A stretch of DNA of 64,000 bases, from the NCBI RefSeq assembly GCF_036321535.1, contig NC_087452.1, forward strand, positions 33,418,001-33,482,000, written 5' to 3'. Origin of the DNA: Camelus dromedarius. Its lineage: Eukaryota. The position numbers were made by a program, and so were the translations under genes. Shown here piece by piece: positions 29,301 through 47,875 of this stretch; the first letter of the stretch is position 1; every line of letters starts with the position of its first letter. Under the pieces are notes generated by a model. That model was not told the DNA's origin. It saw nothing but the letters and a program-made list of their open reading frames with translations, and ran no database searches.

Positions 29301-32300
29301 AGGTTGAGGGGATGACCAGCAGAGGAACTGGGACGGATCGGCAGGCCCCTGGAGGAGTTGGGTCTGACCATCACATGGAGGGTGCCTCTGAGCCCAATCC
29401 ACCTGTTCTGCAGGGTCAGCGAGGGGCAGCTTTTATGTACCACGCCCCCAGGGGCCGCTACTGCCAGCGTTCCCATTCGCCTGCAGGTAGGGGGTGCCAA
29501 GGTGCCTGGCTCCTGGAACTTCCACTACAAGGAAGACCCCATCATGCTGGGCATCAGCCCCAACTGTGGCTACACGTAAGTGCCACCTCCTTGCCCACTC
29601 TGGTCTCCTAAGAACGAAGGATCCAGCCTTGGAGAGCACCACAAGCTCACCACCCCACTCTCCTCCACAGTGGCTCCTATGTGACCATCCGTGGCCAGCA
29701 CCTGACTTCAGTGCGGCACCTCATGGTGTCATTCCATGATGGGCTTAAGGCAGTGGAGAACAGGGTGAGCGGGTGCTGGCAGCTGCAAAGCGGGCACTGG
29801 CCAGGAGGGAGGAAGGCCACACCAGTCCTCTGAGTTCCAGCCCTACCCTGTGCTGAGCTGGGGGACTGGGGTGGCCGTAGGTAGGATACCTGGCTAACCA
29901 CTCTCGCATGGGTCCAGCAGTGTGAAGGGCAGCTCCCGGAGCAGCACTGGTGCCGCCTGCCTGAATACGTGGTCCGAGGTCCTCAGGGGTGGGTGATGGG
30001 GAACCTGAGTGTCCAGGGGGATGGGGCTCCTGGCTTCACACTGCCTGGCTTTCGCTTCCTGCCCCCACCCTACCCACCCAGCACAGACCTGGCCCCGCTG
30101 AAGCCTGAGGAGCATGCCATTAAGTTTGAGGTAAGTGTGGGGGATGAGGGGCTGGGACAGTGGAGGGTTGGGGCTGAAGCCTGCCCAAAGGAGATGGGGG
30201 CACTGGCCAGTCCTCATGACTGTCTCTGCAGTATATTGGGCTGGGTGCTGTGGCTGACTGTGTGGATGTGAACGTGACCGTGGGAGGTGAGAGCTGCCGG
30301 CATGAGCTCCGAGGCGATGTGGTCGTCTGCCCCCTGCCCCTCTCCCTGCAACTTGGCAAGGATGGTGCTCCACTGCAGGTAGGCAGCTCAGCAGGCCTTC
30401 TGCAGGAGATGTGGGTTGAGGGCCTGCAGGCTGGGCCTGAGCTGCCACCTGCCCCCAGGTCTGCGTGGATGGTGGGTGTCACATCCTGGGCAGGGTAGTG
30501 CGGCCAGGTCTGGAAGGGGTCCCCCAGAGCATGCTCCTCTGTGTCCTGCTGGCCCTGCTCCTGCTTGTGGGTGTACTGGCTGCCGTACTGGTCTTCAGTT
30601 ACTACCGGAGGAAACAGCTAGGTGAGCTCTCCACTCCCATCCTGACTCAGCCCCTACTCCAAAACAGTGACACCTCCAAGCCCCTATATCCTTGGTCTGC
30701 CCATGCCTCCTGGGTAGGGGTCAGCCTCTAGGAGCTTGGAATGGTTGGCCACTAGGGGCCATTTTTCCACAGTCCTTTCTCCGAATCTGGATGATTTGGC
30801 ATCCCTGGACAGGACCACTGGAGACTTACCTCTGCCTATTCTCCGCTCAGGCTCTGACTACAGAAATGGCCTCGGTGAGATGGTGGCAGTACTAGAAGCT
30901 GGGGCCATGCCCTCTGTGCCACAAGTCCCTCACTCCCTCTCCTCCACAGCATCCCCTGCCATCAGTGACCTGGGTTCTACCACTCGGATCCACAGAGCAT
31001 CCTTTTCAGACAGTGGGGTCGGATCCCATGTCCCACTGCTGAGGAAAGAGTCCATCCAACTCGGGGACCTGAACCCCACGCTCCTGGCCGAGGTTAAGGA
31101 TGTGCTGATTCCCCATGAACGGGTGCTCACCCACACTGACCGAGTCATTGGCAAAGGTATGGGGGCCAGGCCAGCTGGGACTGGGACAGAGATGGAGTCC
31201 TGAGATGACATGGGCTCAAGGAACAGTTAGGCAGGCCTCTGCTCTGGCCTTCTCACCAACCTGTGTGACCTGAGGCATACTGTGTAACCTCTCTGAGCCT
31301 CCATTTGCTCATCTGGGAAACAGAAATTCTGTCCTCACTGGGTTCTGGTGCAGATTAAGTGGGCCTAGGAAGGCTGCAGGCTCTGCCATCTGGAGGCTGC
31401 CGCTTGTCTTTAATGTCAGATTGGCCAGTTGGTGCTCTGAGGTCTGGGTGCCAATGAGAGGGTGTGGTGGAGCCCTGGGCACTGGGGCTCCTCTCACCAT
31501 CTCTCCCTCATAGGCCATTTTGGAGTCGTCTACCATGGAGAATACATAGACGAGGCCCAGAATCAAGTCCACTGTGCCATCAAGTCGCTGAGTCGTAAGT
31601 GGGACAGAGGCTGGGAGGGTCTCCGTCCCTGCTGTGCAACCACCTCACTGAGCAACCCTGAGCAGGAGAACTTTCTTCTCCATTTCCCTGTCTGACCCTT
31701 GGCTCCCTGCCCTGGGCCTGACTCAAGCCGCTCTGCAGGCATCACAGAAGTGCAGGAGGTGGAGGCCTTCCTGCGCGAGGGGCTGCTCATGCGGGGTCTG
31801 CACCACCCAAACGTGCTGGCTCTCATTGGGATCGTGCTTCCGCCTGAAGGGCTGCCTCGTGTGCTGCTGCCCTACATGCGCCACGGAGACCTGCTCCAGT
31901 TCATCCGCTCACCCCAGCGGGTCAGTGCTCGGTGGGCCCTGGGTCAGGGGCTTGGGCAGCAGCTGGGGATGGAGCTGCTCTGCCTTCACCTACTGACCCA
32001 CCTGTGCCCCTAGAACCCCACGGTGAAGGACCTCATCAGCTTTGGCCTGCAGGTGGCCCGCGGCATGGAGTACCTGGCAGAGCAGAAGTTTGTGCACAGG
32101 GACCTGGCTGCTCGGAACTGCATGTGAGCTGCCAGAGCAGCTGGGGAGAAGCAAGGGGGCAGAGCACCAGGGCCTGCAGCTAAGCTGCACCTCAGGGAGG
32201 GGCCCACGCTCCAGCCCTTGCTGTGCAGCCCTGGACATGTCCTCCTGTCTCTGGGCCTCAGTTTTCCTGTCTACCCTGTGCAGTCTTGGATTGGACATTG

Positions 32301-35231
32301 TGGCTCAGAAACCCTGTGAGGGCTAGGACAGGTGGGTTCAGGGCCTGGTGGGGGCCAGTCCTGAGAGTGATTCCCTTCCCAGGCTGGATGAGTCATTCAC
32401 GGTCAAGGTGGCTGATTTTGGTCTGGCCCGCGACGTCCTGGACAAGGAATACTACAGTGTCCAACAGCACCGCCACGCTCGCCTACCTGTCAAATGGATG
32501 GCTCTCGAGAGCCTACAGACCTACAGATTCACCACCAAGTCTGATGTGGTAAGGCCCCACCTGCCCCAGGGCCCACATTGCTTCAGCGTCCTGGGAGGAC
32601 ACTCAGCCTGGACTTGCCCATTAGCTCCGGACGATGATCTGAGTCCAGGGAATTCCCTAGCTGGGCAGCACCCCCAGCCCATTTGCCCACCTCTGGGCAG
32701 GTGTCAGGGCAAGAGAAGGCTATGAACTCCAGACAATCTGGGCCCTGCCCAACACCAACTTTGGGCAGGCTCAAGTGGTGGGTGGGGACAGAGGGAAGAC
32801 ATTGGTGAGGTTTTGAGGAATGGGCTCTGATTGGGGGGTCAAGCCCCTCCATTCCAGCTAGAGGGCTCTGAGAGGTAGAGGAGCTGGGGGGACCCACCTG
32901 TCTCTAAATTTGGGGTAAGAGTTGAGTCCCTTCACCTCTCTTCTCCCACAGTGGTCGTTTGGTGTGCTGTTATGGGAGCTGCTGACACGGGGTGCCCCAC
33001 CATACTCCCACATTGACCCTTTTGACCTTGCTCACTTCCTGGCCCAGGGTCGCCGCCTGCCCCAGCCTGAGTATTGCCCCGATTCTCTGTGAGTATGTGG
33101 AAGTGGTGATGGGGAGTGAGCTAGGCCCCAGAGACAAGAAAGGGGCTGGAGACAGAGTCCTTGCCTTACTCTTTGCCTGATTCTCTGGCTGACCTGGAAA
33201 AGGACCCTCTCTGGGCCTCAGTTTCCTCATCTGCAGATTGGTTCCACCCCTATTCGGGGCTGGGTGCTGGAAGAATATCACAGTTGCCATGGTAACAGCA
33301 TTTCCTAACTCAGTCTGGATTGAGGCCAGTGATTTGATTTCCCAGCACTCCTCTCCACCCACCCCCACCAAGGGGGGCTGTTTTCCATCTTTTCCTCTTT
33401 CTTAACCTCAAGGAAATGTTCCATTAGCTCCCACACTAGCCCCTCCCCCTCCATCAGCAGATCAGATTTTTTTTTCCACTGGATATAGTTTTAGATTGCC
33501 TGTTCCCAGAGGTATGATGGCCGCTGTGTTTCATCAGTGCCTGATGGGTGGTTTTGGTGCCCAGGTTCAGCTTCATAAGCAGCACACATGCCTCAGCTGT
33601 GCTGAAGTCTCTGGTTAGAACAGGAAGAACACAGGTAAAGGTGGTTGATGAGTCCTATCCAATCTGTGTTCCAGAAGGGTATGAGTAATCCTTCCTCACT
33701 GCCCTGCCTGCCTTGGGTTTGCTCTTTATTATTTACATCACTAATGTGTCTGATTCAAAGTAAGGGAAATTAGGGGGAGGGTATATCTCAGTGGTAGAGT
33801 GTGTGTTTAGCATGCACGAGGTCCTGGGTTCAATTTCTAGTATGTCCACTTAAAATAAATAAATAAACCTAATTCCCTCCCCCTGCAAAACAAAACAAAG
33901 CAGAAAACAAAGTAAAGGAAATTAACTTCACTGTCTATTTGCCTCTATTGCAGTCTCCCTAAACAGACTCTGAGATGGAGATTTATGTGCAGAGGGTTTA
34001 TTGGTAGACTGGGGGTGAGAGAAGCAGGACTAGGCAGGGGAAGAAGTTGGCCTGTGATGCAGATGCAACAGAAGCTACAGCCTATGCCCTGGAAACCTCT
34101 GACACTGGAAAGGCCCTTCAGAGTTTTCTGAAATTGAGATCAAGGGGCCCAGCTATTTGCACCAGACATCAATCAGTCACTGGTCACAGCTGTCCCTGAG
34201 GAAGGAGTGTGAACTTGGAGGAGGCATTTCTTTTCTCCCTAGGGCAATTCCTAGACAGGGCCTCAGCCAAGAGCCATCAGCAGCCACAGGCAGAATAAAG
34301 GGGGGTATCTGGGTGGCACACCACAGCATCCTCTATTTCAGGGCAAGTCCCTTCTCTCTGGGCCTCAGTTTTTCTCATCTGGAAAGTTGGAATGATAACA
34401 GTCCCACCTTCAGAGGGTCTAAAAATTATACGAGATTATTGTGTGTAGGGCAATTGTAGTATCATTTAAGGCAGGGATAATATTTCCAAGATAAAGGCGG
34501 ATGTATTAGGACTCACCCGACAAACCCAGAGACACTTGCTTGGGAACCATGGTGCTATGTGCTGCCCCACACATCTCAGGCTTTTTAATCCCCAGATCTG
34601 GGCTTCCTTCCTGGAAGATATGTGATGATAACCACGATAGCTTGTGAGTTGGGCCCTAAGCTAAGACCTTCACAGGCATCCTCTCACCTTATGCCCCAAT
34701 AGCTCTGTGATCAGAGAAGGATCCAGAGGCACAGAGTTAAGGAACTTGCTCAAGATCACATAGCCCAGGTCACAGGGCACAGGAGCCCCCTGACACAATT
34801 CAACCTTGCCAAGTTGGGAAGGAGAAGAGCTGCCCCTAATTGGGCGATGCAAGGCACCAGGTCCTGTCACCTGCCCTCACCCCTGTGTGGCCTGCCGGGT
34901 GGTAACAGCAAGCAGATGGACCGGAGTCTCTGGGTGCAGTGCACCATGCTTCTGACGTTTTCCTCCACTCGGTAGGTATGCAGTGATGCAGCACTGCTGG
35001 GCTGCAGATCCTGCAGCAAGACCCACCTTCGGAGTGCTGGCAGGGGAAGTGGAGCGCATGGTCGCCACGCTGCGAGGAGACCATTACGTGCAGCTGCCCG
35101 TGGCCTATGTGAACGTGGGTCCTGGCACCTCTGACAAGGCAAACCTGTCATCGGAACAGTCGCCGTCCCCTCCAGTGCACAGGAGCACAGGGCGGCCCCG
35201 GCCCCTCTCAGAGCCACCAAGGCCCACGTGA
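22910..35231 (+). CDS. MST1R: Macrophage-stimulating protein receptor RON (MET-family receptor tyrosine kinase), 1400 aa
   Basis: 20 exons: 22910-24142, 27006-27194, 27269-27397, 27576-27746, 28060-28220, 28569-28734, 28847-28983, 29414-29575, 29671-29764, 29921-30130, 30232-30378, 30459-30621, 30773-30874, 30950-31156, 31514-31594, 31739-31920, 32014-32123, 32383-32548, 32952-33088, 34976-35231. Total 4203 nt = 1400 aa + stop. Shows a signal peptide, Sema domain, furin site KRRRR (23825-23839), PSI/IPT domains, TM helix from 30531, [20 protein letters not shown], activation loop KEYY and docking site YVQL..YVNV. Confidence 0.97.
26567..26580 (+). promoter_or_regulatory. Candidate CTCF site in MST1R intron 1
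   Basis: CCAGCAGGGGGCAG is a full match to the CTCF core CCASYAGRKGGCRS. Confidence 0.5.
26600..26770 (+). mobile_element. MIR relic in MST1R intron 1
   Basis: aaacctctgtgagccagtttccttctctgtaatatggggg...aaggctgtgagga. Confidence 0.55.
33283..33296. promoter_or_regulatory. RFX X-box (GTTGCCATGGTAAC) in MST1R intron 19
   Basis: Near-palindromic 14-mer matching the RFX consensus GTTRCCATGGYAAC. Confidence 0.65.
33773..33907 (+). mobile_element. Young tRNA-derived SINE (vic-1-like), copy 4
   Basis: Same head and body. 17-bp TSD caaagtaagggaaatta (33756-33772) / caaagtaaaggaaatta (33908-33924). Confidence 0.9.
33935..34330. mobile_element. MLT1-type MaLR LTR relic
   Basis: aaacagactctgagatggagatttatgtgcagagggtttattgg...gaagcaggactaggcaggggaagaagttggcctgtgatgcag resembles MLT1I/J-type LTRs. 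Confidence 0.55.
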
Positions 35232-35494
35232 CCTCAGCCCCAGGCAGGACCTGAGGGATTGGACCTGTGTAATGGTGGGAGTTAACCCAAGCTGCCTCTG
35301 GGCTGGCCTCTGCCCCTGTCCCTGCCTCTCAGCCTTCAGGGGCATGGGAAGGTGCAAGGCACAATGGCCTCTCACTCCACAGAGGGAACCAGTGAGGGGA
35401 TCCTTGATGCAGTATTTATGGAATGTCTGCTGTGTGCCTGGCTGCTGGGCACAGGGGACTCAATGGTGACCACTGGCCCTTGAATCAGTAAATG

Positions 35495-35500
35495 AATAAA
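35495..35500 (+). terminator. Likely MST1R polyadenylation signal (AATAAA)
   Basis: First AATAAA, about 265 nt after the stop codon. It lies in an L2-like tail (gtaaatgaataaatga). Confidence 0.55.
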
Positions 35501-35959
35501 TGAGTATTCAAGTTCAAATTGTGATAAATGCTGTGAAAGAAACAGACAGGCTGTTTTGAGGGAATGGAGGGCAGCTTTAGATAGCAAGATGAATAGAAAG
35601 GTGTGGGAAGCCACCCCAGGAGGTGACATTTTTTCTGAGACTTTGTCAGTGGGAACTGTGCCAGAAGCAGTTGAGGGAAGAGAGTTTTGGGTGGAGTGAA
35701 CAGTGCATGAAAAGACCCTGAGGCTGGAAAGGGTTTGAGTCAGCAAGAAGGCTCCAGAGATCAGGAAGGGTAGGCAAGGCCCAGATCTAGGGCCCTGGGG
35801 ACTTTGGGATGGAACCAGGAGGGGTAGGTTGAGTAACCAGACATGTAGCAGTCAGGGTGGCTTCTCCCACTGCCCAGTCTGCCTGTCCCATTTTCCAGGC
35901 CCCAGTTCCTCTCCAGGGCTCCCTGCTCTACCTGCTATCTTCCCCCAACACCCCCTCCT

Positions 35960-36010
35960 ACCACACACACACACACACACACACGTGCACACACACACTC
36001 ACTCGCACAC
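35960..36010. repeat. Interrupted (CA)n microsatellite
   Basis: acacacacacacacacacacacgtgcacacacacac. Confidence 0.9.
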
Positions 36011-39000
36011 TGTCAAGGTGTGGAGACTTGCTTCCCTCCACCCCAACCCTGGCAGCATTGCTCTTGCAACCTTGAGAGAGATGAGCCAGCAGCAAGGCCT
36101 CGGCTCCACACTTTCACGTCACCAGCGTCGAGGTGCAGACTGCTCAGGCTGTTTATACGCATCAAGGCCACTGTACAATAGCCACTGGAGGGGCGGGCTC
36201 CACTGGAGAAGGAGAACAACTTCCTTCTGGTCCCACCCCTCCCCCATGCCCCCAATGCTGAGGGAGCAGCTGGGCCCTGCTGGTGTGGATAGCTGGGGTA
36301 TCAGGGTGACTGGGCCCAACACATGCACCCTGGTGGTTCCTCTCTCTTGCTCCAGATCCCCGTGGCCTCTATCCCACCAGCTGGGAGACCCCACCACACC
36401 CAAAGGGGAGTAGACTGCCTCTCCTTTGGGTCCGCAGCTCTTTGCCCTGTCATCTGTGGAACCCTGGGTCTCCTTGGGGCTGGAGCTGGCCAGCTGTTTT
36501 CTGCCCATACTCTCACCTCAGGCCATGGGGAGGCCCAGCTATGGGGAGCCTAAGGACCCTGAGGACAGGTGGGTAAAAGACTTCTCCACTCAAGCGCAGG
36601 GGTCTGAAGGTCAGGGCCCTATGAGCTGGTGAAGGGTAGAGGCTGACTCAGTCTCTACCTGTTTGACTGCACCTCTAATGCCCATGAGTGCAGGCACAGA
36701 GGAGATGGTAGCCCTGCATGCTCTGCCAGAGACCCCTGGGCTCCCGCCTATCATGTCACCCCTGAGGCTGGGAGAGAGGAGACTGGACTGTATTCCCACA
36801 GTGCTGGAGTATTTCAGAGCTGTGGTCCCCATACTTGTTGGAAAGGACCGTCTCCAGCTTTCCAAGGTGCAGTCCTCGTGCCCTAACCTCATCCTGGGCA
36901 TCTAAGGGTCATCCAATCTCCAAGTCCTGGGTGGGGAGTGAGGAGAAGGTTCAGAGGCTTCTCTGAAGCTGGTCTGAGGTTCCTTCTCCACTGAGCCTCT
37001 GCAGCTTATGGACCTCTAGCTTACCTGTTCGTAAGAGAGGGGCTCAGACAAGAAGGGGGTCTCTGGATGGGAGGGAAGCTTAGAAAGGAGAGGAGTCTGG
37101 GAGAAGGCAGATGGAAGAAGCTCAAGGGGTGTCAGGTTTCCTGTGCAGTCAGAATGTGGGGCTTTGGGCCTGTTTCTGGGCCAAGGGTCTCCAGGCCCAG
37201 GAGTCTCCAGGGAGAGGACACAGTTAAATAGGGGCTTGGCACAGCTGCATCTCCTCCCCATAATGCTGCAGCCCCCAAGCACCTAACTGTTCGCAAAGCC
37301 ACTTGATAGTCCCGAGTCCATCTGGAGTGTTAGGAGCTGGAACTGCTTCAGGGCTTCAGATTCCTGACCGGGCCACCAGGGAGGAGAGGAAGGGAGGGTT
37401 AGATCTAGGCCCCCAGATGGGCTGGGGGGACCAGGAGTTTTCTGAATGGCTTCCAGGGCTAGTGAAGGCTGGGCTGCCTTTCTCCTGGGGAAGGACTGAG
37501 TAGTGGCTGGAGCAAGAGGAAAGTTGTTGGTGGACATGGTGGGCCTAGGCCTGCCACGAGGGTGAGATGGGGTGAGGACAGGTTTTTTTCCAGGGCTTTG
37601 GGAGTCCAGTCTTCCCACCATGAGTTGTAGAGAGCAAGCATCAGCTCCTCTGCCTCAATTTCAGAGAGGCTGGGGGCAAGCAGGTGCCAGTAAAGGCTGG
37701 AGGAAGGCCAGGATGGGAGCTGGGGCTGAGGTGGCAGCAGATGACTCACATCCTCCTGACTGCCCATTGGTGTCATGTTGTCTGGCACCTGGAGGGCATG
37801 CACAGGGTAGACCCACCTGCTTTGATGAGGGCCCATGAATCTGGTCTGAGATTCCCCTTATGCCAAAGCCCTAGCCTTTCAGAGAATTTCCTCAGAGACC
37901 CCAAGGGGCTCTGGGGGTCACACCTGAGGGCTCCAGGCATAGCCTCATTTCAACTCCAAGACCTTCCTGAAATAGTGGCTTCATCAGTCACTCCCTTGGT
38001 GCAGCCCATGAGGTCCCAGGTCCACCTCTGCTGCCATTTCAGGAACTGACTCCCTTCACTTGTAGGAGAGAGCAGGACCCCTCAGTACCAGGTAGGGTCA
38101 GGGGACATAGGGGCAGCTGCAAGTTTCTGAGGCTTTGGAAGGCCCAGGACACATCTCTTGCATTTACTGCCTCAGCCTGGAGAGAAGCAGCCCTGGGAAT
38201 CAGAAGCTGAGCCCTGGTCTGGGATCTGCCAGGCTCCTTTTACTCATGCTGGGCTGCAAAATTTCTCCTTGAAGACCTCAGGAACTGAGCATCTCTTCAC
38301 CCCAAGCCTATGCTCTGCCCATGTGAGAGTCCAACCAGCCAGGAGGTGGGATGACTTGCTGAACCACCCCCAACATTTCCCACCTGGCACAGAGGGGCCA
38401 GCTGAGCCTCAGTCTCTCTCTTCATTCTATTGAGGCTTATTCCAGTCAAGATTTTTAACCCAACAAGCCTAGAGGCCAAGAGAGCCTGGACAGCTACCAC
38501 ATTCATCTCTGGCTATGGTGGCCTCCTGGGTGGGCTGGGTTCTTCAGGTCTAAAGATGATGACCTGGCATCAGTCCTACTGATATGTTTCTGGGGAGCCC
38601 CCTCTCCAAAGGAAAAGGAATTCCTTGGGTGGCCCCAGTCATTCTGCCCTCGTGAGCGCCCACCCTGGTCTCTCTGACCCAGCCAGCAGTTCTTAGTCAC
38701 CCCCATCCTCCACTGGGCCTGGGTTCCTCAGGGACCCTGAGGGAGGGCAGCTCTCCTCACACCCCCTTTGCAGGTGTGCTCGGAGGCCTCTTCTCGGCAG
38801 TCATGAAGTCCTGCATGTTCTGACAGCAATTCCTTCCCCTCATCCTTTGCTGGTTCCTACTCCCAGGGAGGGTAAGGAGTTCGCTCCAGTCCCTAAGCCA
38901 GCTGTGGACAGCTGTCAGGGTGGCTGTGCTGTGGTCCTCCCTCCTGGCTGGTGCGGCTGGCCATCTTTCACGCAGAGTTACGTAAGCTTGAGTCAATTGG

Positions 39001-40263
39001 AGCTCAGAGCGGTTCATTGTGGGCTATTTTTAAGCTGTAACACATCACAGCAGAGGGGTCACTGCACCATGGCTTGCAGGGAAGGTTGTTTAAACAGTTG
39101 TTATTTGAATTTCTCCGTGCCTTAGAGCTCAAGAGCCACGTCCTCCTGCACTCTTGGGTTTTGCCTTTCACATCCCAGATGAGGAGTGGATTATCACCCC
39201 TCATCTTGCCATAGCTTCCTCTAGGACTGGGGTTCCCTGCACCGTGACTGCGTTCCTTTGGGGCCAGGTGGGTGGGCAGAGAGAAGGTGTGCCAGCTCCT
39301 TCAAACATGGTGTTGCCTCCAAGGAATGGGTACACTGACCAGGAGAGACTGCCAGGGAAGCAGGAAGTTAGGGTTCACAGGGAGGAGAGGAAAACGCAGA
39401 GTGCTGTGTATAGAGCTGAGAGACCAAGAGTGCAGCCTTTGTCCTCGGGGGCTTTGGTTTCCCATCAGTACCTAGAGAGGGTTGATCACAATGTCCTTCT
39501 GGGTCTCTTCAGACGCCTGCCTTTGCCTGGGCTGTTCCCCTACCTGGGGTGCCCTCCCTTCACAGATCTAAATGCTACCCATGTACAGCCTCTGGGACAG
39601 AAGGGCTGGTGTGTGAGCCCCTGGACAGTGGGCAGGGATGAATGTCTGGGGAAACAGACAGGCATTGATTTTCACTCCATTATCAAGTGGTTGGCTGCAC
39701 TGGGAGCCCTCTCAGCCTCCTTTTGATCCTAGGTTTTTGGAGATGTTCAGAGTCTTCCCAGAGTCCCAGGAGGGGAAGACAGGTAGACTGGAAGAGTGCA
39801 GGGCCAAGGACTTGACAGAGCTGACTCCTGAGAACACAACAGAGCCGAAAATACGTCTGTGTGGGAGAAGCAGGTCTGGAAGGCTCGGCTGGTCACGGAG
39901 CTCTGGGTAGAATGGAGCTCCTATGCCTCTCCTCTTGATGCCCTTCCTACCCACCATCCTCCAGGCCTCCTCAGTGGGAGGATTCCAGCCTGATCCACAG
40001 GGAAGGAGGGTTTCTCAGACTGAGGTGACTCACCCCATCTCCTGAAGTCTGACCCTCTCCACAGGGGCCTTCCTCCTCCCCCTAGGCCTGCCCGGAGGGG
40101 TCGTGAAGCGTGAAGGGAGGCAATGCTGGAATCTGCCCCCACAGAGGAGCCTCTGCCTGGCCTTGCCCTCAGACTGAACTCCTTCCTGTTGCTTCTGGGC
40201 CCCTTCATCCCAGACAGCCCTCAGCCTGGGGAATGGGCTCAGCCTGGGGGAGGGGCTCTCAAG

Positions 40264-40277
40264 GTTGCCATGGTAAC
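40264..40277. promoter_or_regulatory. RFX X-box (GTTGCCATGGTAAC)
   Basis: Identical to the 14-mer at 33283. Confidence 0.65.
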
Positions 40278-40789
40278 ATGTTGGCCCTCCTCACTTTCCA
40301 GAATCAGAAATAGAATTGGATGCCCTTCTTCCTGGTGAGAGACTATTTAAAAACATGTTGGGGGGAGGGGTACAGGGGCAATGTCCCTGCCTGATCCCAG
40401 GGGGCTGGGCAGAAGAGCTTGGGAGCCTCTCTAAACTGCCCTGCTGCCCCTCCCCTCGGCTGGATGAAACGGAAGGGGCTTCAGCCAGCCAAGAATTCTG
40501 ACTACAAAGGACTCAGCCTGGTCCCCCAGGTATGTAACTAGCCCCTACTCAGCACCGCCAGGTTCCTGGGAGGGCACTGATTTAGTGGCACGAAGAGGAA
40601 AAAATGCTCCCCTCCTAAAAATGCCCACCTGCTAAGCTGTTGGGAGGAGGAGCAGGTCCATGTGGGATGGAGCTTGGGGAGGCAGCACTCAGAAGCAAGG
40701 CATGTTGACTCCCCTCCAGGAGGGTCCGTGCCTACATGGCCCTGGGCAGGCACCCATTGGTGGCACCATAGGTTCCTGAAGTGTGGTAT

Positions 40790-40990
40790 CTAGAGCCTGG
40801 TGGCCTGGCTTTGGATTCTGGCTCGACAACTCATTAGCTGCGACCTCTGTGAGTTCTCTCCCCTCTCTACCTTGATTTCCTCGTTTGTAAAATAAGAATG
40901 ATTGTCCCTGGCTCACTGAACTGCTGTGAAGCTGGGTTACAATGCTCAGCGCTGCCTGGCCCAGGGAAGGACCCAGTCAGTAATTGTCAC
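40790..40990 (+). mobile_element. MIR relic
   Basis: ggctttggattctggctc...tagctgcgacctctgtgagttctctc...ttgatttcctcgtttgtaaaataagaatgat...gtgaagct...gctcagcgctgcctggc. Confidence 0.6.
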
Positions 40991-42959
40991 TCTTCTTGTT
41001 GCTCTCAAGGGTGTTTGCTTTCCAGGTAGGAAGAGCCTTCTCCTCTCTCCAGACTGCCTTCTTTGGTCCCTCCTTCACAGGCCACACCCTTCTCAGGTCA
41101 GTCGTTCACAAGGACTCCAGCCCTGGAAAGGAGGATTACGCCTCATTTCCGCAGGAGGTTGGGGATGGCTCAGTGGTCAGACAGGAAGGAGCTTTCAGGT
41201 CCTCCCTCCATGCCTCCCCAGCCCTCCCAGGTGCAGCCCAGCTCAAGGGCTGCAAGAGCATCAGAGGCTGCTACTAGTATCTCTCTTGTGGGGAAAAACA
41301 AAACAAAATATAAAAAAACAGTTTGCTCCAGGCAAGAGATTAATGAAGTTAACAGTGCTCAGCAAGTATGTGTGTGTATGCACACACGTGCAAGCCACAG
41401 ACCCTGGGGTTCTGCCACCTTCCTGGGTGTGTGGTAAGCAGAGGCATCTGTCCTCATTTGGAACTGAAGGCAGCATCTGGGGAAGGGAGAGCGGTCCCGG
41501 GGGGCCTGAGACATGACTGAGTCAGGCTGTGCCCAATCCCGAGTCAGGAATGTGCAGATGGAGCTCAGTGCTAGCCTTGGTCCCTGGTCACATCACTTCA
41601 CACCCCACAGCCCAACTGTAAGCACTATTTTTAACTCCTGTGAAAACACACTGCTTCAGAGGACAAGCCTACAGCTGCATTCTCCACAGACCTGTTTCCT
41701 AGGTGGAAAGACTGAGGCCTGAAAGGCCAGCCCTGGACAACAGAGGGAGGAGACCCAGAGCTCATAGCTGAGGGAGGGTGGAGGGTCTGACCCCGCCCCA
41801 GGCAGAACTCCAGAGCCAGGTCTGTGGAAATAGGTGGTGCCCCAAACTAGGCCTATCCTCTGTGGCTGCAGGGCACATCTGGGCCTGGGATGGTGGTCCA
41901 GGCAGGTCCTACTCCTCCCTGACCCTCAGTTTGCCCATCTAAGAAATGGAGGGTGGAACTGCCCACCTGGTCTGACAGCTTCCTTTCCTGTATGCCTCTC
42001 CAAGTTTATTCCTTTGTCCAGCTTGTCCTCCCTATGTATGCAGCTGTGCCCACTGTGTGTCCAGTCCCACACCCACCATACCCCCACTGTGTAGTGAGCC
42101 CTCTGCCCACTGTGAGAATGGCCCTGTAACCACTGTATCCCCACTATGACCCATCCTGTAATTGTGACTTGACTGGCCCAGTGTCCACTGTGGCCTAGGC
42201 CTATGCCCAGTGTTCTAGCCTCCTTCTGGCCAAGGTGAAATTGACACAATGTGACAAAGGCTAGAACATTCTGACTTGAGGATTCTGAGCAGAGGCCCCA
42301 CCCCCGTCCGAGTTGTGCCCATCCCCACCCCTGTGGGATACTGGTCCTGGGCCTCAAGGACATGTGGCTCTGGGGAGGGGGCTCTGGGAGGCACAGGCAG
42401 AGGAGAACCATCTGGAGCAGAAAGACTGCCAAGGAGCTGCTGTCCCTGGAGTGGGAGCCGGGGAACATGGGGGAGGGGAGTTTGGGCCTGAGCCTGGGCC
42501 CCTCACCCACTTCTGCCTCTTAGGACTGAGTGGTGAAGGAGCTTTGGACCCCTAAAGGGCCTCGTGTCACACACTTGGAACTGCATCCCTGGGTTAGGGT
42601 TTAAGTCTCAAGTTGCCACTTGGGAACCGGGGAGAAAGAGTAAGTCTGGCATCTGAGGTAGTCTGGGAACCCAGGTGCTTCCTCAGCATCTCCTCTGCCT
42701 ACCTTTCTCCCTTGGCCTTATATACACTCCCACCTCCAGGAGCACTGCCCTCACGCAAGGGCTGGCCTGGGCCGAGTGGCCACCTGGCTGGCAAGGAGAG
42801 AGAAGGCCAGTCCAGAGTTGGCTGACTTCACTGGCATCCCTTGGCCTTTCTGTCTCCCAGGGTTCCATGCGCAGGCCCCCACTCCTCAGGGGGGTGGGGC
42901 CCCTGGTTTCCCACACTCTGTCACCCTCCCCCAGGTCACTGGGGGCTGTGATGTGTGGA

Positions 42960-42973
42960 GTTGCCATGGCAAT
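42960..42973. promoter_or_regulatory. RFX X-box (GTTGCCATGGCAAT), probable ACTL11 promoter element
   Basis: One mismatch from the perfect palindrome GTTGCCATGGCAAC. It ends 38 nt before the ORF ATG. Confidence 0.65.
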
Positions 42974-43011
42974 GAAGTGGGGGCAGGGCACCTAGGGCAT
43001 GGAGCAGGACT

Positions 43012-46000
43012 ATGGAAGTCACCAAGAAAGTGGGGGACCCTGATCCATCGGGCCCCCAGGGCCACCCCTTGGCTGGTAGCCAGCAGCTGGGGGGTGGCCT
43101 TAGAGGGTCCCAGGGACCCTGGATAAACTCAGGATCTGTATACTTGAGGCAGGGTTTGTCACTGTCCACCGAGGCCATCACTGATGGGGCCTATGGCCCA
43201 GCCTCCCAGACCCACACCCCCAAGCCCACTCACCAGCAACTCCAGGACCCTGCTGAGGTTAGCTCCCAATGTGGCTGTGAGCAGGCCTCCCAGGATGCCC
43301 TGACCCTCTCCTCCACTAGCCCGTTTCCAAGCCCCGTCGTGGGAGCCCAAACACATCTCATCATGGAGAACAGGACCCTGGCCTTACCTGTGTGCACGCG
43401 CAGTGACGGTACCAGTGACATGGCCCAGCACGGACTCTGCTGCTCCCGGCTTCAGGTGCAGATTTCGGGGGAGGGCAAGGCTCCAGCTAAAGTTCTAGTA
43501 GGCTGGGGCAGAGGCCCCTGCAGCCCTGATCAGATAGCCCCAATGGGCATTAGAAAGAGCCGGTGGCTACCCTATTTTCTTCCAGGGGAGGATGGCTCAG
43601 CTGCAGCCCAAGTTCCTCTTCTGGCCCCAGTGCAAGATCAGGGCCAGGACAAGTGTCCATGTCCAACTCAGGCTCCTCCAGCTTCAACTCAGGCAAATAT
43701 TCCAGCTCTGGATACAACCCCAATATCAGTAGCAGTTGAAACTTACACCTGCAACCTCGACCCCCTGACTAATACTAATGCCATCACCAAGGACCTGTCC
43801 CAAGACCTCTTGCCCAGGAATTATGGCAATCAATGGTCAATCTACTCGGAGTCTTCCAAAGGGGTCACATCCTGCCAGGACAAAGTGAATTTCCATTCTC
43901 AGAATGAGCCTCCCACCCCAGCACCCACTCCAAATCAGTCCCCAGACCAGGCCCAGGAGCTCGAGGTTGCCAGAAGGCTTGTGTTACCCAAGCAGCCTGA
44001 AAACCAACTGGAGAAGCCCCTGGTCTGTACCTCCAGGCCAAGCAGCCCAAAACCAGGCTCAGGGCCCCTAGGGACCCCCAAGTCCCAGAGGGGTAGCCAG
44101 GAGATCTGCAGCTCTCAGCCATATCAGCAGCCCTTCAATGTTTGCGACAACACCTGCTCCAATGTGCCCCTGTCTGCCCACCAAGTAAACTACCACAAGC
44201 AGTCCCCAGCAGAGACTCCCAGGGAAGCCATGCAGATACCCCTCTCCAGTGCCCCTACCTGTCAGCTCCAGGATGCTGTAGAAGACCGTGTGCTGGTGTT
44301 TGATATGGCCACAGGCAATACCAGGATGGGGCTACTGTGCCATGACCCCATGGGCTCACCTGCAGTGCTGGTGGGCCTCATGCCCAGCCACTCATCCATC
44401 CGTGCCTCTGAAAATCTTCTGTCTACCCGGCCATTGGCCATGCCCATTCTCTCCCCTGACAGCAATCGCTCCAGCCTCTGGTCTACCACGCCCATGGTGT
44501 CCAGCCCTGTGCCCTCTAGCCTTTCATCTGGAAGCTACCGAGAGGTGGCCCTGGTTCCCAAGGAGGCCAGGGTCAACCTGGAGTCAGTGGACTCCCCTGG
44601 TACTGAGACACCCATCAGGATGGGGATGCTCACTGGGCCTATTCCACTGGGGATGCCCCTCCAATTTGGAGAGAGGACACTTAGCCATGCCCATGGTCCT
44701 GGCTGGTCCAAACCTGATGCTGAAAAAAATGAAGCTAGTCACACCATCTGGATGCTGGATGCCTCCAGGATGCAGGATACCTCTATGGTCCAGGCCAAGA
44801 AATTGCAGTGGATGAACTCAGAGCAGAGCCCAGAGTATGTACCACCAGCCAAAACCCAGGATGTGCCCAGACCCCAGCTCCAGAAGGATGTAGGCAGCAA
44901 CAGTCAGAAAGAGGTCATTACTCCTCATCCTGACCACCCTCAGGTCCAAGATGCTGGGCAGGGTCCCCTCGGTGGTCAGCCCCCACTAGCCGAACAGTGT
45001 ACCCTAGCCAGACAGCCCCCTTCAACCAGTCAGCCTCCTTCTGCAGAGCACTGTCCCCACACCAGGCAGACCTACCTTTCGGGACAGCCACCCCTAGCTG
45101 AGCAGGCCCCCTCCACCAAGCGGACTTGCCTTCCTGGTCAGCCCCCTCTTCCTGGGACACCTAATGGCAGGCAGCTTTCTCTCACTGGGCAGCCTCCCTT
45201 TTCCCAAGTGCCTCCCACCTCCACTGTGCCTACCCTCTCAAGAGGGCCCCCTGCCACTAGGGAACCTGGTCAGGCCTCCACCTTGTGCCAGGAACATGAG
45301 CCCTTGGGCCACCGTACCCACGTGGGGGTGGTTCGGGTGCCCCTGCCCCCTGAGGAGACCTGTGTCTCTGTGAACAGAGAAAAAGTTGGTGCCAGTGCTA
45401 CTCAAAGCTCCAGCACACATCAGCTCTCATCCTGGCAACCTGGCTGCTCCCCCAGGGCCCAAGAGGCACAGCTGTCCCTGATCCCATTCACCACATCTGG
45501 CACTGGTTGCAAGGTCTTGCCCATGGCCATGGTGGGCCCTGAGCCCCAGGGTCCCCGGTTCAAGCTGACAGCTGAGGACATTACACACTCACCAGTGGTC
45601 GCACACCTTGGTCTGCTCCGAGGGGCCTGCTATGAGCTGGTGCCCACCACGAACACCCTGCCAGTGCAGTCCCCAGTGCTCTGCCGCCACTCTCTGGGCC
45701 CCTACCAGGACATGGCAGCTGTGGTGATCGACACAGGCACAGGCTTCACCAAGTGTGGACTGGCTGGAGAAGACCATGTCCTGAGTGTAGTGCCCTCACG
45801 CGTACAGCTGCTCCAGCACCCGGTTCAGGGCCAGCCCAGGTATGCAGTGCCTGAGAAACGAGAGGGCTCTTACTCAGTGCTGAATCGAGGAGTGGTCTCC
45901 GACTGGGATGCGCTGGAGGTGCTGTGGCAGCACCTGTTCTACTGCAGGCTGGGTGTGCGGCCCGAGGAGCTGGCGGTGCTGGTAGCTGACTCACCCATCT

Positions 46001-46764
46001 CACCGCGCACCAACCGAGAAAAGGTAGCTGAAATACTCTTTGAGCGTTTCCATGTGCCAGCCATGCAGACGGTGCATCAGGCCCTGCTGGCGCTCTATGC
46101 TTATGGGCGCACCACTGGGCTGGTGCTGGGCAGTGGCCATGGCACTTCCTATGTGGCGCCCATCATCACTGGGGATCTGGCCCCACTGGACACCTACCGG
46201 CTGGATGTGGCTGGTGCTGACCTCACTGAATACCTGGCTCAGCTGTTGTTGGCAAGTGGCCACTCACCACCCAAGGCAGAGCTGGTCAACCAGATTAAAG
46301 AGGCTTGCTGCTATGTGGCCATGGACATGACAGCCGAGATGGCCCGTGCCCAGGCCCAGGCCCGGGTGGACTTTGTGCTTCCAGACAAGCAGGTCATCAC
46401 GCTGGGCTCTGAGCGCTTCTGCTGCCCCGAGGCCCTCTTCCAGCCCAATCTGCTAGGCTTCAATCAGCCAGGCCTCCCACAACTAGCCCTCCTAAGTATT
46501 AGCCGGCTGGAGACCAAGCAGCAGGAGCAGCTGCTGGCTAATGTGGTGCTGGACGGTGGTAGCACCCTGTTGAATGGCTTTCCTGAACGCCTGAGACAGG
46601 AACTGGGCCCTTGTGCCACTGTACTGGGCTCTCCGCACCGTGCTGTTGCTGCTTGGCTCGGAGGTTCCATCATGGTGTCCCGAGACTCCTTCCAGAGCCT
46701 GTGGCTCAGCCGCCATGAGTACGAGGAGGAGGGCCCATGGGCCATCTACAAGTACCATCTGTGA
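43012..46764 (+). CDS. ACTL11: Actin-like protein 11 ortholog, single exon, 1250 aa (long low-complexity N-terminus plus C-terminal actin fold)
   Basis: Uninterrupted 3753-nt ORF with ATG in a strong context (actATGg). Residues about 901-1250 align by eye to actin (AVVIDTGTGFTKCG, WDALEVLW, HQALLALYAYGRTTG, ERFCCPEALFQP, VLDGGST, WLGGSI, EYEEEGP). Its position between MST1R and CAMKV matches mouse Actl11 / human ACTL11P as I recall. An alternative start ATG at 43363 is also in a strong context. Confidence 0.88.
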   Translation: MEVTKKVGDPDPSGPQGHPLAGSQQLGGGLRGSQGPWINSGSVYLRQGLSLSTEAITDGAYGPASQTHTPKPTHQQLQDPAEVSSQCGCEQASQDALTLSSTSPFPSPVVGAQTHLIMENRTLALPVCTRSDGTSDMAQHGLCCSRLQVQISGEGKAPAKVLVGWGRGPCSPDQIAPMGIRKSRWLPYFLPGEDGSAAAQVPLLAPVQDQGQDKCPCPTQAPPASTQANIPALDTTPISVAVETYTCNLDPLTNTNAITKDLSQDLLPRNYGNQWSIYSESSKGVTSCQDKVNFHSQNEPPTPAPTPNQSPDQAQELEVARRLVLPKQPENQLEKPLVCTSRPSSPKPGSGPLGTPKSQRGSQEICSSQPYQQPFNVCDNTCSNVPLSAHQVNYHKQSPAETPREAMQIPLSSAPTCQLQDAVEDRVLVFDMATGNTRMGLLCHDPMGSPAVLVGLMPSHSSIRASENLLSTRPLAMPILSPDSNRSSLWSTTPMVSSPVPSSLSSGSYREVALVPKEARVNLESVDSPGTETPIRMGMLTGPIPLGMPLQFGERTLSHAHGPGWSKPDAEKNEASHTIWMLDASRMQDTSMVQAKKLQWMNSEQSPEYVPPAKTQDVPRPQLQKDVGSNSQKEVITPHPDHPQVQDAGQGPLGGQPPLAEQCTLARQPPSTSQPPSAEHCPHTRQTYLSGQPPLAEQAPSTKRTCLPGQPPLPGTPNGRQLSLTGQPPFSQVPPTSTVPTLSRGPPATREPGQASTLCQEHEPLGHRTHVGVVRVPLPPEETCVSVNREKVGASATQSSSTHQLSSWQPGCSPRAQEAQLSLIPFTTSGTGCKVLPMAMVGPEPQGPRFKLTAEDITHSPVVAHLGLLRGACYELVPTTNTLPVQSPVLCRHSLGPYQDMAAVVIDTGTGFTKCGLAGEDHVLSVVPSRVQLLQHPVQGQPRYAVPEKREGSYSVLNRGVVSDWDALEVLWQHLFYCRLGVRPEELAVLVADSPISPRTNREKVAEILFERFHVPAMQTVHQALLALYAYGRTTGLVLGSGHGTSYVAPIITGDLAPLDTYRLDVAGADLTEYLAQLLLASGHSPPKAELVNQIKEACCYVAMDMTAEMARAQAQARVDFVLPDKQVITLGSERFCCPEALFQPNLLGFNQPGLPQLALLSISRLETKQQEQLLANVVLDGGSTLLNGFPERLRQELGPCATVLGSPHRAVAAWLGGSIMVSRDSFQSLWLSRHEYEEEGPWAIYKYHL

Positions 46765-47044
46765 GCACATAAAAGTTCTGGTTCTGCTTACTTTGACCAC
46801 TGTGGCACATTTTAGGCAGAGGGTGGTGGAGGGAAGGGCAGGAGTCCAGGCATGGGATCAGAGATGGAGGGCTTGGCACTCTCAAGGCACCCCCTGCTTC
46901 CACACACTGGAATTCCAGGGGCCTTGGCAAGCCTATCCCTTCCAGAGCCCCAGAGCCCCTTGCCTGGCACTGGCCCTGGTCTAACCTGACCTTTACTGCA
47001 CCCCAAGGGCAACCACAGAGAGTGGCTGCTGTGGGTTTTGCCCT

Positions 47045-47100
47045 GTTGCCCTGGCGACAAGCTCAATTACCCTTGATTGCCAGCTGGTTGCCATGGCAAT
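47045..47100. promoter_or_regulatory. Pair of RFX X-boxes downstream of ACTL11
   Basis: GTTGCCCTGGCGAC (47045-47058) and GTTGCCATGGCAAT (47087-47100). Confidence 0.6.
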
Positions 47101-47869: not shown

Positions 47870-47875
47870 AATAAA
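47870..47875 (+). terminator. Candidate polyadenylation signal (AATAAA)
   Basis: First canonical AATAAA I found after the ACTL11 stop, followed by GT-rich ctctgtgt. A variant CATAAA sits at 46768-46773. Confidence 0.45.

What the first reader, a model, noticed from the sequence alone, without database searches (positions are those of the whole stretch)
33283..47100. Cluster of RFX X-boxes bracketing ACTL11: a candidate RFX-controlled spermatid module
Seen: GTTGCCATGGTAAC at 33283 and 40264, GTTGCCATGGCAAT at 42960 and 47087, and GTTGCCCTGGCGAC at 47045. A rough uniform-base estimate for GTTGCCATGGYAAY on either strand of 64 kb is about 0.002 expected; four occur, all within 14 kb around one gene. 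Knowledge: RFX2 is a major regulator of spermiogenesis and cilia genes. Inference: ACTL11 sits in a multi-site RFX regulatory unit squeezed between an epithelial receptor gene and a neuronal gene, which would link it to spermatid cytoskeleton building.
Basis: partly seen in the sequence, partly recalled or inferred. Interest (0 to 1): 0.7.

Follow-up and report, generated by a model that had tools for sequence, protein, structure and literature searches.

The report
Conserved RFX sites around ACTL11
Five binding words for RFX transcription factors around the sperm gene ACTL11 in a camel genome are real. Four have stayed at the same spots across placental mammals, so they are probably working switches: one belongs to ACTL11, and the others also coincide with elements cloned as candidate brain-cell enhancers in human.

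Summary
All five X-box motifs are at the stated coordinates: four exact matches against 0.04 expected from shuffles and about 0.003 expected from this genome's own density.

Sites B (40264), C (42960), D (47045) and E (47087) lie in three single-copy blocks. These blocks rank among the six most conserved non-coding 100-bp stretches between MST1R and CAMKV in ten other placental mammals.
- C sits 52 bp before the ACTL11 start codon in ten of the eleven species.
- D and E are 42 bp apart, about 300 bp after the stop codon.
- Site A (33283) lies in the last MST1R intron beside a dispersed repeat. It could be checked only in elephant, where it is identical.

Published mouse tables show that Actl11 switches on in round spermatids. 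It falls 4.4-fold in Rfx2-null testis at P30 and belongs to the SETD1B–RFX2 broad-H3K4me3 class. No RFX2 promoter peak was called at P21.

Primers from a human interneuron study place its cloned "MST1R" and "CAMKV" candidate enhancers on blocks B and D/E. In a monkey with a broken ACTL11 reading frame, C is disrupted while B and E stay constrained.

Verdict: this is a real RFX module, only partly ACTL11-specific.

The parts
33283..33296 (.). Site A, X-box GTTGCCATGGTAAC, in the last intron of MST1R and 42 bp from a dispersed-repeat core. Whether it belongs to the module is uncertain.
   Evidence: Searches show the motif. Searches place the flanking MST1R exons at 32919-33089 and about 34974-35231. 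Searches show the repeat core at 33204-33241. One search shows it identical in elephant, the only locus that reaches it.
40200..40450 (.). Block B, a single-copy conserved non-coding block 2.7 kb upstream of ACTL11. It holds X-box B (40264-40277), an inverted CCAAT (ATTGG, 40315-40319) and a TATA-like TATTTAAAAA (40344-40353).
   Evidence: Searches show an X-box in all 10 other species, a perfect palindrome in 5 of them. ranks it the 3rd most conserved non-coding 100-bp window. One search shows it is single-copy. One search places it inside the fragment bounded by the human 'MST1R' CRE primers when mapped on Pygathrix.
42850..43011 (+). Block C, the ACTL11 proximal promoter or 5' leader. X-box C lies at 42960-42973, 52 bp before the start codon, with a GC-box-like GGGGTGGGGCC about 65 bp upstream.
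   Evidence: Searches show the same -52 offset in 10 of the 11 species (-55 in Pygathrix, which has a 3-bp insertion). The left half is GTCACC in mouse, lemur and Pygathrix. ranks it 6th. One search shows it is single-copy. Searches show it disrupted by a ~125-bp insertion in Pygathrix.
43012..46764 (+). ACTL11, a single open reading frame of 1250 aa with a long N-terminal region and a C-terminal actin domain.
   Evidence: One search finds a 100% match to a Camelus ferus protein and about 100 placental orthologues. Searches confirm MST1R-ACTL11 synteny.
46990..47150 (.). Block D/E, a single-copy conserved block just after the ACTL11 stop. It holds X-box D (47045-47058) and X-box E (47087-47100), 42 bp apart, extra half-sites (GGGCAAC near 47010, ATTGCC near 47075), TGACCTTT, CAATTA and an AP-1 word TGAGTCA (47136-47142).
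   Evidence: In one search, E has 138 of 140 identical cells and the block ranks 2nd. One search shows it is single-copy. One search places it inside the fragment bounded by the human 'CAMKV' CRE primers, camel 46295-47702. Searches show reproductive-tract RNA contigs appear to run through it.
32014..35231 (+). 3' end of MST1R: kinase-domain exons and the last exon, with the stop codon at 35229-35231.
   Evidence: Orthologous loci show a Sema/TIG/PK_Tyr gene upstream on the same strand.
50001..51000 (+). CpG island, the probable CAMKV transcription start. The first coding exon begins at 57312.
   Evidence: One search gives GC 0.71 and CpG o/e 0.76. Searches show the CAMKV N-terminus at 57312. 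The elephant locus has a Pkinase gene downstream.

Best explanation
Sites B, C, D and E are genuine, selectively maintained RFX-family binding sites. They sit in three single-copy regulatory blocks that flank the single-exon, spermatid-expressed gene ACTL11.

Proposed mechanism:
- Block C is ACTL11's own proximal element. An RFX dimer, RFX2 in round spermatids, binds the X-box 52 bp before the start codon and helps switch the gene on after meiosis.
- Blocks B (-2.7 kb) and D/E (+0.3 kb after the stop) are RFX-dependent enhancers at the two edges of the ~7-kb unit. In spermatids they probably add RFX2 and SETD1B recruitment, giving the broad H3K4me3 class reported for mouse Actl11.
- B and D/E are also used outside the testis, in neural progenitors or neurons by RFX3/RFX4-type factors, most likely for the neighbouring CAMKV.
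- Site A, in an MST1R intron, is of uncertain membership.

Shown here: the motifs, their rarity, their single-copy status, their conservation and fixed spacing, and transcription of the locus in reproductive-tract RNA samples.

Taken from papers: the Rfx2 and Setd1b dependence of Actl11 and its spermatid timing in mouse, and the cloning of B- and D/E-containing fragments as human neural CREs.

Inferred: actual RFX occupancy, which gene each block serves, and the link between the site layout and the broad chromatin domain.
For: 1. Rarity. Four exact matches against 0.04 expected and about 0.0035 from the genome's own density.
2. Conservation.
- B and E are present in all 10 other placental species examined.
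- C is present in all 10, at the same 52-bp offset from the start codon in 9 and shifted 3 bp in Pygathrix.
- D's strong half-site is invariant except in lemur.
- The D-E spacing is 42 bp in the five species where both score.
3. The blocks rank 2nd, 3rd and 6th among non-coding 100-bp windows of 35-50 kb. Block D/E is as conserved as the actin-domain coding sequence.
4. The blocks are single-copy and match no Rfam family.
5. RNA contigs of three 'reproductive system' or related studies hold 0.84-0.92 of 42500-47500.
6. In mouse, Actl11 is about 0 until diplotene, then RS2 7, RS4 40, RS8 84 and RS10 362. It is down in Setd1b KO (log2FC -1.11) with status 'Promoter STE'. Broad H3K4me3 domains are RFX2-motif-enriched and 75% reduced in Rfx2 KO (PMC12012180).
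7. Actl11 shows logFC -2.15, P 1e-10 in Rfx2-/- testis at P30, with an 'RFX2-like expression profile' (PMC4498915 Tables S1, S2).
8. ACTL11 is an abundant boar sperm phosphoprotein (PMC8322956).
9. In Pygathrix the ACTL11 frame is broken. Block C carries a ~125-bp insertion and 16 private changes, against 5 or fewer in every other species. Blocks B and E have 4 and 3, within the range of the others.
10. The human 'MST1R' and 'CAMKV' CRE primers bracket B and D/E.
Against: - No RFX occupancy data were available for these sites.
- The only table found lists Actl11 as ChIP-Seq 'no'. That experiment used P21 germ cells and counted peaks only within -500 to +50 of the annotated start.
- The P30 drop in Rfx2-null testis could be secondary to spermatid arrest.
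- Deep RNA runs hold 0.94 of 42500-43011. The start may therefore lie well upstream of C, or those libraries may carry unspliced RNA or DNA.
- C and E each miss the classical consensus by one base (final T instead of C).
- The whole 35-52 kb interval is unusually conserved, with on average 6-8 of 10 species identical per base. Conservation of each single 14-mer is therefore only moderately exceptional: 1-6% of non-coding 14-mers do as well.
- The meaning of 'STE' is not defined in the text held. I read it by analogy with the categories of Table S6.
- The Pygathrix contrast rests on one species and one assembly.
Confidence: 0.5

Rival explanations
1. The module is mainly neural. Blocks B and D/E, together with the other conserved blocks of the interval, are enhancers used by RFX3/RFX4-type factors in neural progenitors and neurons for CAMKV or another neighbour. 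ACTL11 merely lies among them. At most block C serves ACTL11, and the fall of Actl11 in Rfx2-null testis is a by-product of spermatid arrest.
For: - Human H3K27ac-defined CREs named 'CAMKV' and 'MST1R' were cloned for reporter assays. Their primers map around D/E and B.
- In that study all six tested CREs with an RFX motif were active.
- B and E remain constrained in Pygathrix although ACTL11 is frame-shifted.
- Block D/E carries an invariant AP-1 word. The most conserved block of the interval (38960-39090) has AP-1, MEF2-consensus and TTACGTAA words, a grammar typical of neuronal enhancers (motif reading from general knowledge).
- Mouse RFX2 ChIP lists no Actl11 promoter peak.
Against: - The text held does not say which six CREs carried the RFX motif, nor which gene they regulate. 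Gene names there are nearest-gene labels.
- C is fixed 52 bp before the ACTL11 start codon in 10 species and decays with the gene.
- Actl11 switches on in round spermatids, the stage where Rfx2-null spermatids arrest (RS2), and belongs to the RFX2-dependent broad-domain class.
- No X-box lies at the CAMKV CpG island itself.
Confidence: 0.3
2. Block D/E is conserved for an RNA-level reason. It would be the end of the ACTL11 3' UTR, holding cleavage and polyadenylation or translational-control signals, and its X-box words would be incidental.
For: - RNA contigs of reproductive-tract runs appear to extend through the block (by arithmetic on shares).
- The only canonical AATAAA after the stop is at 47870 and is less conserved. 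The invariant stretch 47100-47130 has UGUA, an AAUAAC word and a CA.
Against: - Two X-boxes at a fixed 42-bp spacing, plus extra half-sites, lie within 7 kb of two further conserved X-boxes. In this genome such words occur about once per 4 Mb.
- The block stays constrained in a species with a broken ACTL11.
- The block lies inside a fragment cloned as a DNA enhancer candidate in human cells.
- The 3' end is not mapped.
Confidence: 0.07
3. The X-boxes act as boundary or insulating elements. They would separate three differently regulated neighbours: epithelial MST1R, testis ACTL11 and neuronal CAMKV.
For: The sites fall at the edges of the ACTL11 unit, between genes with different expression. 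This is layout only.
Against: Nothing found here or in the papers read shows a boundary function for RFX at such sites. Block C lies inside the unit, not at an edge.
Confidence: 0.05
4. Chance or repeat-derived motifs without function.
For: Site A lies next to a dispersed-repeat core. The interval as a whole evolves slowly.
Against: The motifs are rare, single-copy, conserved in position and spacing in up to 10 other species, and fall at local conservation peaks.
Confidence: 0.03

Closest known systems
RFX2-dependent spermatid genes with a promoter-proximal X-box (Kistler et al. 2015, PMC4498915)
   Same: A 14-bp palindromic X-box lies close to the gene start. The gene is post-meiotic and testis-expressed. 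Expression is reduced in Rfx2-null testis.
   Different: Mouse Actl11 has no called promoter peak at P21 and is reduced only at P30. Here there are four conserved sites spread over 7 kb, two of them after the stop codon, rather than one promoter site.
Spermatid-specific broad H3K4me3 domains set by the SETD1B-RFX2 axis (Lin et al. 2025, PMC12012180)
   Same: Mouse Actl11 is listed as down in Setd1b KO late spermatids with status 'Promoter STE'. Such domains are at least 5 kb long and enriched in RFX2 and CREM motifs. The B-to-E span is about 7 kb.
   Different: The domain coordinates on mouse chr9 are not in the copy held. The match between X-box positions and domain edges is therefore untested, and 'STE' is not defined in the text held.
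RFX3/RFX4-motif enhancers of human cortical interneuron progenitors (PMC11140214)
   Same: The fragments cloned there under the names 'MST1R' and 'CAMKV' are bracketed by primers that map around blocks B and D/E. RFX-motif CREs were all active in that assay.
   Different: The paper does not say, in the text held, that these two were among the RFX-motif CREs. It does not link them to ACTL11. The target gene is unassigned.
Ciliary-gene X-box promoters (DAF-19/RFX targets, RFX/FOXJ1 programme)
   Same: There is a strong X-box at a short, fixed distance upstream of the start codon. Actl11 is flagged 'high stringency in CilDB' in Kistler Table S1.
   Different: ACTL11 is an actin-like sperm protein with no shown ciliary role. 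No forkhead site was looked for.
MHC class II S-X-X2-Y enhanceosome module
   Same: Block B has an X-box followed by an inverted CCAAT (Y-like) box.
   Different: The spacing is 37 bp from the X-box to ATTGG rather than the tight S-X-Y spacing. No X2/CRE-like word or S box was seen (module definition from general knowledge). It is not a member.

Membership tests
RFX binding site (X-box) | Match to the palindromic consensus GTNRCC(N0-3)RGYAAC | tested here: met
   A, B and D match fully. C and E have one perfect half-site plus a second half ending in T instead of C, one mismatch to GTTGCCATGGCAAC. B is the perfect palindrome in horse, cattle, bat, hare and Pygathrix.
RFX binding site (X-box) | Evolutionary maintenance at the orthologous position | tested here: met
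   B, C and E are present in all 10 other species. D is exact in 4 and its strong half-site is kept in the rest except lemur. A could be tested only in elephant, where it is identical.
RFX binding site (X-box) | Occupancy by an RFX protein in vivo | not testable with these tools
   No ChIP track is available. Kistler Table S1 lists Actl11 as ChIP-Seq 'no' for a promoter peak at P21.
Direct RFX2 target gene in testis (Kistler 2015 definition) | RFX2 ChIP peak within -500 to +50 of the start, plus differential expression in Rfx2-/- testis | tested here: not met
   From the paper's tables for mouse: ChIP 'no'; DE only at P30 (down, logFC -2.15). The ChIP stage (P21) precedes strong Actl11 expression, so failing this definition is weak evidence against regulation.
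SETD1B-RFX2 broad H3K4me3 gene | Broad (>=5 kb) spermatid H3K4me3 domain at the gene and reduced expression in Setd1b KO | tested here: inconclusive
   Table S7 gives Actl11 log2FC -1.11, padj 3.6e-5, status 'Promoter STE'. Table S8 shows H3K4me3 density rising from about 2 to 17-41 in round spermatids. Domain coordinates for chr9 are not held.
Repeat-derived motif | The site and its flanks recur as a dispersed family in the genome | tested here: not met
   Blocks B, C and D/E each hit only themselves in 2.3 Gb. For A, only the neighbouring 33204-33241 recurs. The copies do not align over the X-box, so A stays open.
MHC class II-type SXY module | S, X1, X2 and Y boxes with fixed tight spacing | tested here: not met
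   Block B has X and an inverted CCAAT 37 bp away. No X2 or S word was seen.

The most novel reading that the evidence does not exclude
A dual-use homotypic RFX array. The same four deeply conserved X-boxes would nucleate an RFX2/SETD1B broad H3K4me3 domain over a single-exon spermatid gene in the testis. In the brain they would act as RFX3/4 (plus AP-1) enhancers for the neighbouring CAMKV. That would explain why the flanking sites survive in primates whose ACTL11 is decaying while the gene's own promoter site does not.
Probability: 0.25. Interest if true: 0.6.

Novelty: new member of a known kind. Interest (0 to 1): 0.5.

Why it matters
ACTL11 is an almost unstudied, abundant sperm protein. 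A concrete cis-regulatory map gives a direct handle on how it is switched on: one promoter X-box and two flanking X-box blocks, all with fixed positions in placental mammals.

The layout also offers a small, testable case for two open questions. The first is what DNA grammar specifies the RFX2/SETD1B 'broad H3K4me3' domains of spermatids. The second is how one family of binding sites can be shared between a testis gene and a neuronal neighbour.

The contrast seen in one monkey suggests a simple comparative test for assigning enhancers to genes. There the promoter block is broken together with the gene, while the flanking blocks stay intact.

The link between RFX2 and Actl11 expression is already implicit in published supplementary tables. 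What is new is the site map and the dual-use reading, not the regulator.

Tried and rejected
No transcript start, end or strand could be read.
  - After that, no letters of 42266-42306 were sent as a query to any search, alignment or database tool. Comparisons used the pieces up to 42260 and from 42310.
  - Whole-window motif scans in local scripts passed over those places as part of the window file.
  - The conservation profile has a gap there.
- I tried to estimate transcript ends from the shares of words held by RNA runs.
  - Deep runs hold 0.94 of 42500-43011. That share may reflect a few SNPs rather than missing ends.
  - Shallow runs hold 0.15-0.19.
  - The figures are too coarse, so only 'transcribed in reproductive-tract RNA' is kept.
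- Dog Logan contigs of 6.2 and 7.8 kb looked like possible transcripts. They are collinear with the genome and end in a SINE-like stretch and a GT microsatellite, so they are genomic pieces.
- N-terminally extended ACTL11 models of other species (elephant, one unnamed) did not reveal a conserved upstream exon in camel.
- CAMKV promoter reading of D/E: rejected. The CAMKV start codon is at 57312 and the CpG island at 50-51 kb. The TATA-like word at 47217 is not kept in dog.
- SXY-module reading of block B: rejected on spacing.
- Origin of site A from the neighbouring repeat: the dispersed copies align only over the core, so this is undecided. My recollection that the repeat is MIR and that its consensus has an X-box-like stretch is a lead from memory, not a test.
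- Broad-domain coordinates for mouse chr9 are not in the held copy of Table S5.
- The Wu et al. 2016 and Lemeille et al. 2020 supplements are not held or hold nothing relevant.
- The armadillo locus could not be fetched.


Full report
**1. Observation**

The pattern GTTGCCATGGYAAY occurs four times in the window. Dinucleotide-preserving shuffles give 0.04 matches, and none of 100 shuffles reached four.

The window's own genome gives an empirical background: 292 forward and 286 reverse matches in 2.31 Gb. That is about one per 4 Mb, or 0.0035 expected in the 13.8-kb interval by my arithmetic. In the first 100 listed places (contigs C1 to C5), no two distinct sites lie within 15 kb of each other.

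One caveat applies. Earlier notes of this scan describe tight X-box arrays elsewhere in this genome, so clustering of RFX words is a recurring feature and not unique to this locus.

The classical degenerate consensus GTNRCC(N0-3)RGYAAC is met in full by A, B and D. C and E each have one perfect half-site and a second half ending in T. There is no further X-box in the window, and none at the CAMKV CpG island.

**2. Gene map**

The 1250-aa ORF at 43012-46764 has a C-terminal actin domain. It is 100% identical to a Camelus ferus protein, with full-length orthologues in about 100 placental species, several named ACTL11.

MST1R lies upstream on the same strand.
- Its kinase exons run from 32014 to 33089.
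- Its last exon ends with the stop codon at 35229-35231.
- Orthologous loci show the same Sema/TIG/tyrosine-kinase gene upstream.

CAMKV lies downstream. Its first coding exon starts at 57312, and the only CpG island of the interval is at 50-51 kb.

The sites therefore sit as follows.

| Site | Position | Location |
|---|---|---|
| A | 33283 | last MST1R intron |
| B | 40264 | 2748 bp before the ACTL11 start codon, 5 kb after the MST1R stop |
| C | 42960 | 52 bp before the ACTL11 start codon |
| D | 47045 | 281 bp after the ACTL11 stop |
| E | 47087 | 323 bp after the ACTL11 stop |

D and E lie about 3 kb before the probable CAMKV start.

**3. Are they repeat-derived?**

Blocks B, C and D/E each match only themselves in the 2.3-Gb genome. 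No repeat family within the interval carries them. No Rfam family matches the conserved blocks.

Site A is different. The stretch 33204-33241, 42 bp to its left, recurs at seven or more dispersed places. The copies align only over that core. Whether the X-box itself came from the repeat is therefore undecided.

**4. Conservation**

I fetched the ACTL11 locus with 10-kb flanks from horse, dog, cattle, Mus caroli, gray whale, a Hipposideros bat, hare, Asian elephant, a lemur and the monkey Pygathrix.
- B is present in all ten. It is the perfect palindrome in five.
- C lies at exactly -52 from the start codon in nine of them. It is shifted by a 3-bp insertion in Pygathrix. The left half is GTCACC, still GTNRCC, in mouse, lemur and Pygathrix.
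- E is present in all ten.
- D's strong half-site GTTGCC is invariant except in lemur. Its weaker half varies at a CpG.
- The D-E distance is 42 bp in the five species where both score.

The motifs sit in larger conserved blocks. Among all non-coding 100-bp windows between 35 and 50 kb, the D/E, B and C blocks rank 2nd, 3rd and 6th. D/E is as conserved as the actin-domain coding sequence.

The interval as a whole is slowly evolving, with 6-8 of 10 species identical per base. Each 14-mer alone is therefore only in the top 1-6%. The argument rests on the coincidence of rare words, local conservation peaks and fixed spacing.

Site A could be examined only in elephant, because the other loci stop short of it. 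It is identical there, against an 82% identical background. That is suggestive but not significant.

**5. What else is in the blocks** (motif reading from general knowledge)

- Block B has, after the X-box, an inverted CCAAT at 40315 and a TATA-like TATTTAAAAA at 40344. Both are invariant or nearly so. It looks promoter-like, but I found no evidence of a transcript starting there.
- Block D/E has extra RFX half-sites, TGACCTTT, CAATTA and an AP-1 word at 47136 kept in all eleven species.
- Block C has a GC-box-like word about 65 bp upstream of the X-box and no TATA.

**6. Expression**

RNA contigs from three studies labelled 'reproductive system' or from a related organism hold 0.84-0.92 of the words of 42500-47500. 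The locus is therefore transcribed there.

I worked beside those places afterwards. Word shares for 42500-43011 are 0.94 in deep runs and 0.15-0.19 in shallow ones. This is compatible with a main start some tens of bases upstream of C plus weaker upstream or unspliced signal, but it is too coarse to rely on.

**7.

Kistler et al. 2015 (PMC4498915):
- Table S1 lists Actl11 as ChIP-Seq 'no', not changed at P21, and down at P30 (logFC -2.15, P 1e-10, base mean 4590).
- Table S2 marks it as down at P30 with an RFX2-like expression profile.
- The ChIP used P21 germ cells. Only peaks within -500 to +50 of the start counted, and two thirds of all peaks lay elsewhere.

Lin et al. 2025 (PMC12012180):
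- Actl11 is silent until meiosis ends, then rises: RS2 7, RS4 40, RS8 84, RS10 362. H3K4me3 density rises in parallel.
- It is down in Setd1b KO with status 'Promoter STE'.
- The paper reports that spermatid broad H3K4me3 domains (5 kb or longer) are enriched in RFX2 and CREM motifs. 75% of them shrink in Rfx2 KO, and RFX2 binds SETD1B.

The negative ChIP entry is therefore weak counter-evidence, because it comes from the wrong stage and a narrow window. The P30 drop is weak support, because spermatid arrest could cause it. The broad-domain class fits a multi-site RFX layout spanning about 7 kb. The domain coordinates are not in the held copy.

ACTL11 protein is a heavily phosphorylated boar sperm protein (PMC8322956).

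**8. Evidence that the unit is not purely spermatid**

A study of human cortical interneuron development (PMC11140214) cloned 29 H3K27ac-defined candidate enhancers. Two of them were named 'CAMKV' and 'MST1R'. Six of the 29 had an RFX motif and all six were active.
- The 'CAMKV' primers map convergently to Pygathrix 13483-14863, to lemur, and, with more mismatches, to camel 46295-47702. That fragment contains D and E.
- The 'MST1R' primers map to Pygathrix 5316-7406, a fragment containing B.
- The text held does not say whether these two are among the six.

**9.

Anthropoid primate models are truncated in different ways, while lemurs are full length.

| Species | Part of the camel protein covered |
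|---|---|
| Pygathrix | 1-842 |
| Plecturocebus | 1-785 |
| gorilla | 280-1185 |
| Saguinus | 222-1250 |

In the Pygathrix locus the frame shifts near residue 840 and a 360-nt insertion interrupts the N-terminal part.

I counted substitutions private to one species at columns where the other ten agree.

| Block | Pygathrix | Other species |
|---|---|---|
| B | 4 | 1-8 |
| E | 3 | 1-6 |
| C | 16 | at most 5 |

The excess in C comes largely from a ~125-bp insertion about 30 bp upstream of X-box C. So the gene's own proximal block is broken together with the gene, while the flanking blocks are still constrained. This rests on one species and one assembly.

**10. Synthesis**

B, C, D and E are very probably functional RFX sites (my estimate about 0.8).
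- C behaves as ACTL11's own element.
- B and D/E have a function that does not need ACTL11, most simply neural RFX enhancers near CAMKV.
- Whether B and D/E also serve ACTL11 in spermatids is the open point. It is the difference between my best explanation (0.5) and the main rival (0.3).
- A remains unassigned.

The regulator-gene link is implicit in published tables. The site map, its depth of conservation and the dual-use reading are new. I file it as a new member of a known kind, with moderate interest.

Noticed in passing
window 38960-39090: The most conserved non-coding block of the MST1R-ACTL11 interval (9.76 of 10 species identical per base; 26-bp and 19-bp invariant runs) carries no X-box. 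It has TTACGTAA, TGAGTCA (AP-1), ATTGG, CATTGT and CTATTTTTAA (MEF2 consensus). This looks like a neuronal or activity-type enhancer.
   Followed up: partly
window 42360-42460 and 48430-48530: Two further top-ranked conserved non-coding blocks (ranks 4 and 5) without X-boxes.
   Followed up: no
window 42966-43040: The CCATGG core of X-box C supplies an upstream ATG in good context. It opens a 9-codon frame ending at 42995. A second upstream ATG at 42999 opens a short frame that overlaps the ACTL11 start out of frame. If transcription starts upstream of C, these would be upstream ORFs.
   Followed up: no
window 33779-33848 (+): A tRNA-like match (Rfam RF00005, 35.2 bits) inside the last MST1R intron, probably a tRNA-derived SINE.
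   Followed up: no
protein P0101 (Bos) and locus L006 (bat): Gene models in other species join ACTL11 to its neighbours. One is a 788-aa bovine 'CaM kinase-like vesicle-associated protein' with an actin domain plus kinase domains. Another is a bat RING-finger (TRAIP-like) model starting 1.9 kb upstream of ACTL11. These suggest read-through transcription or model artefacts.
   Followed up: no
proteins P0080, P0096, P0097, P0073; locus L013: Anthropoid primate ACTL11 models are truncated at different ends, whereas lemur models are full length. The Pygathrix actin-domain frame is still open and 85% identical to camel after the frameshift, so the break may be recent or an assembly error.
   Followed up: partly
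window 59994-60149: A run of 156 N lies inside the repetitive C-terminal coding part of CAMKV.
   Followed up: no
window 35948-36023 and 48408-48467: Imperfect CA microsatellites on either side of the ACTL11 unit.
   Followed up: no
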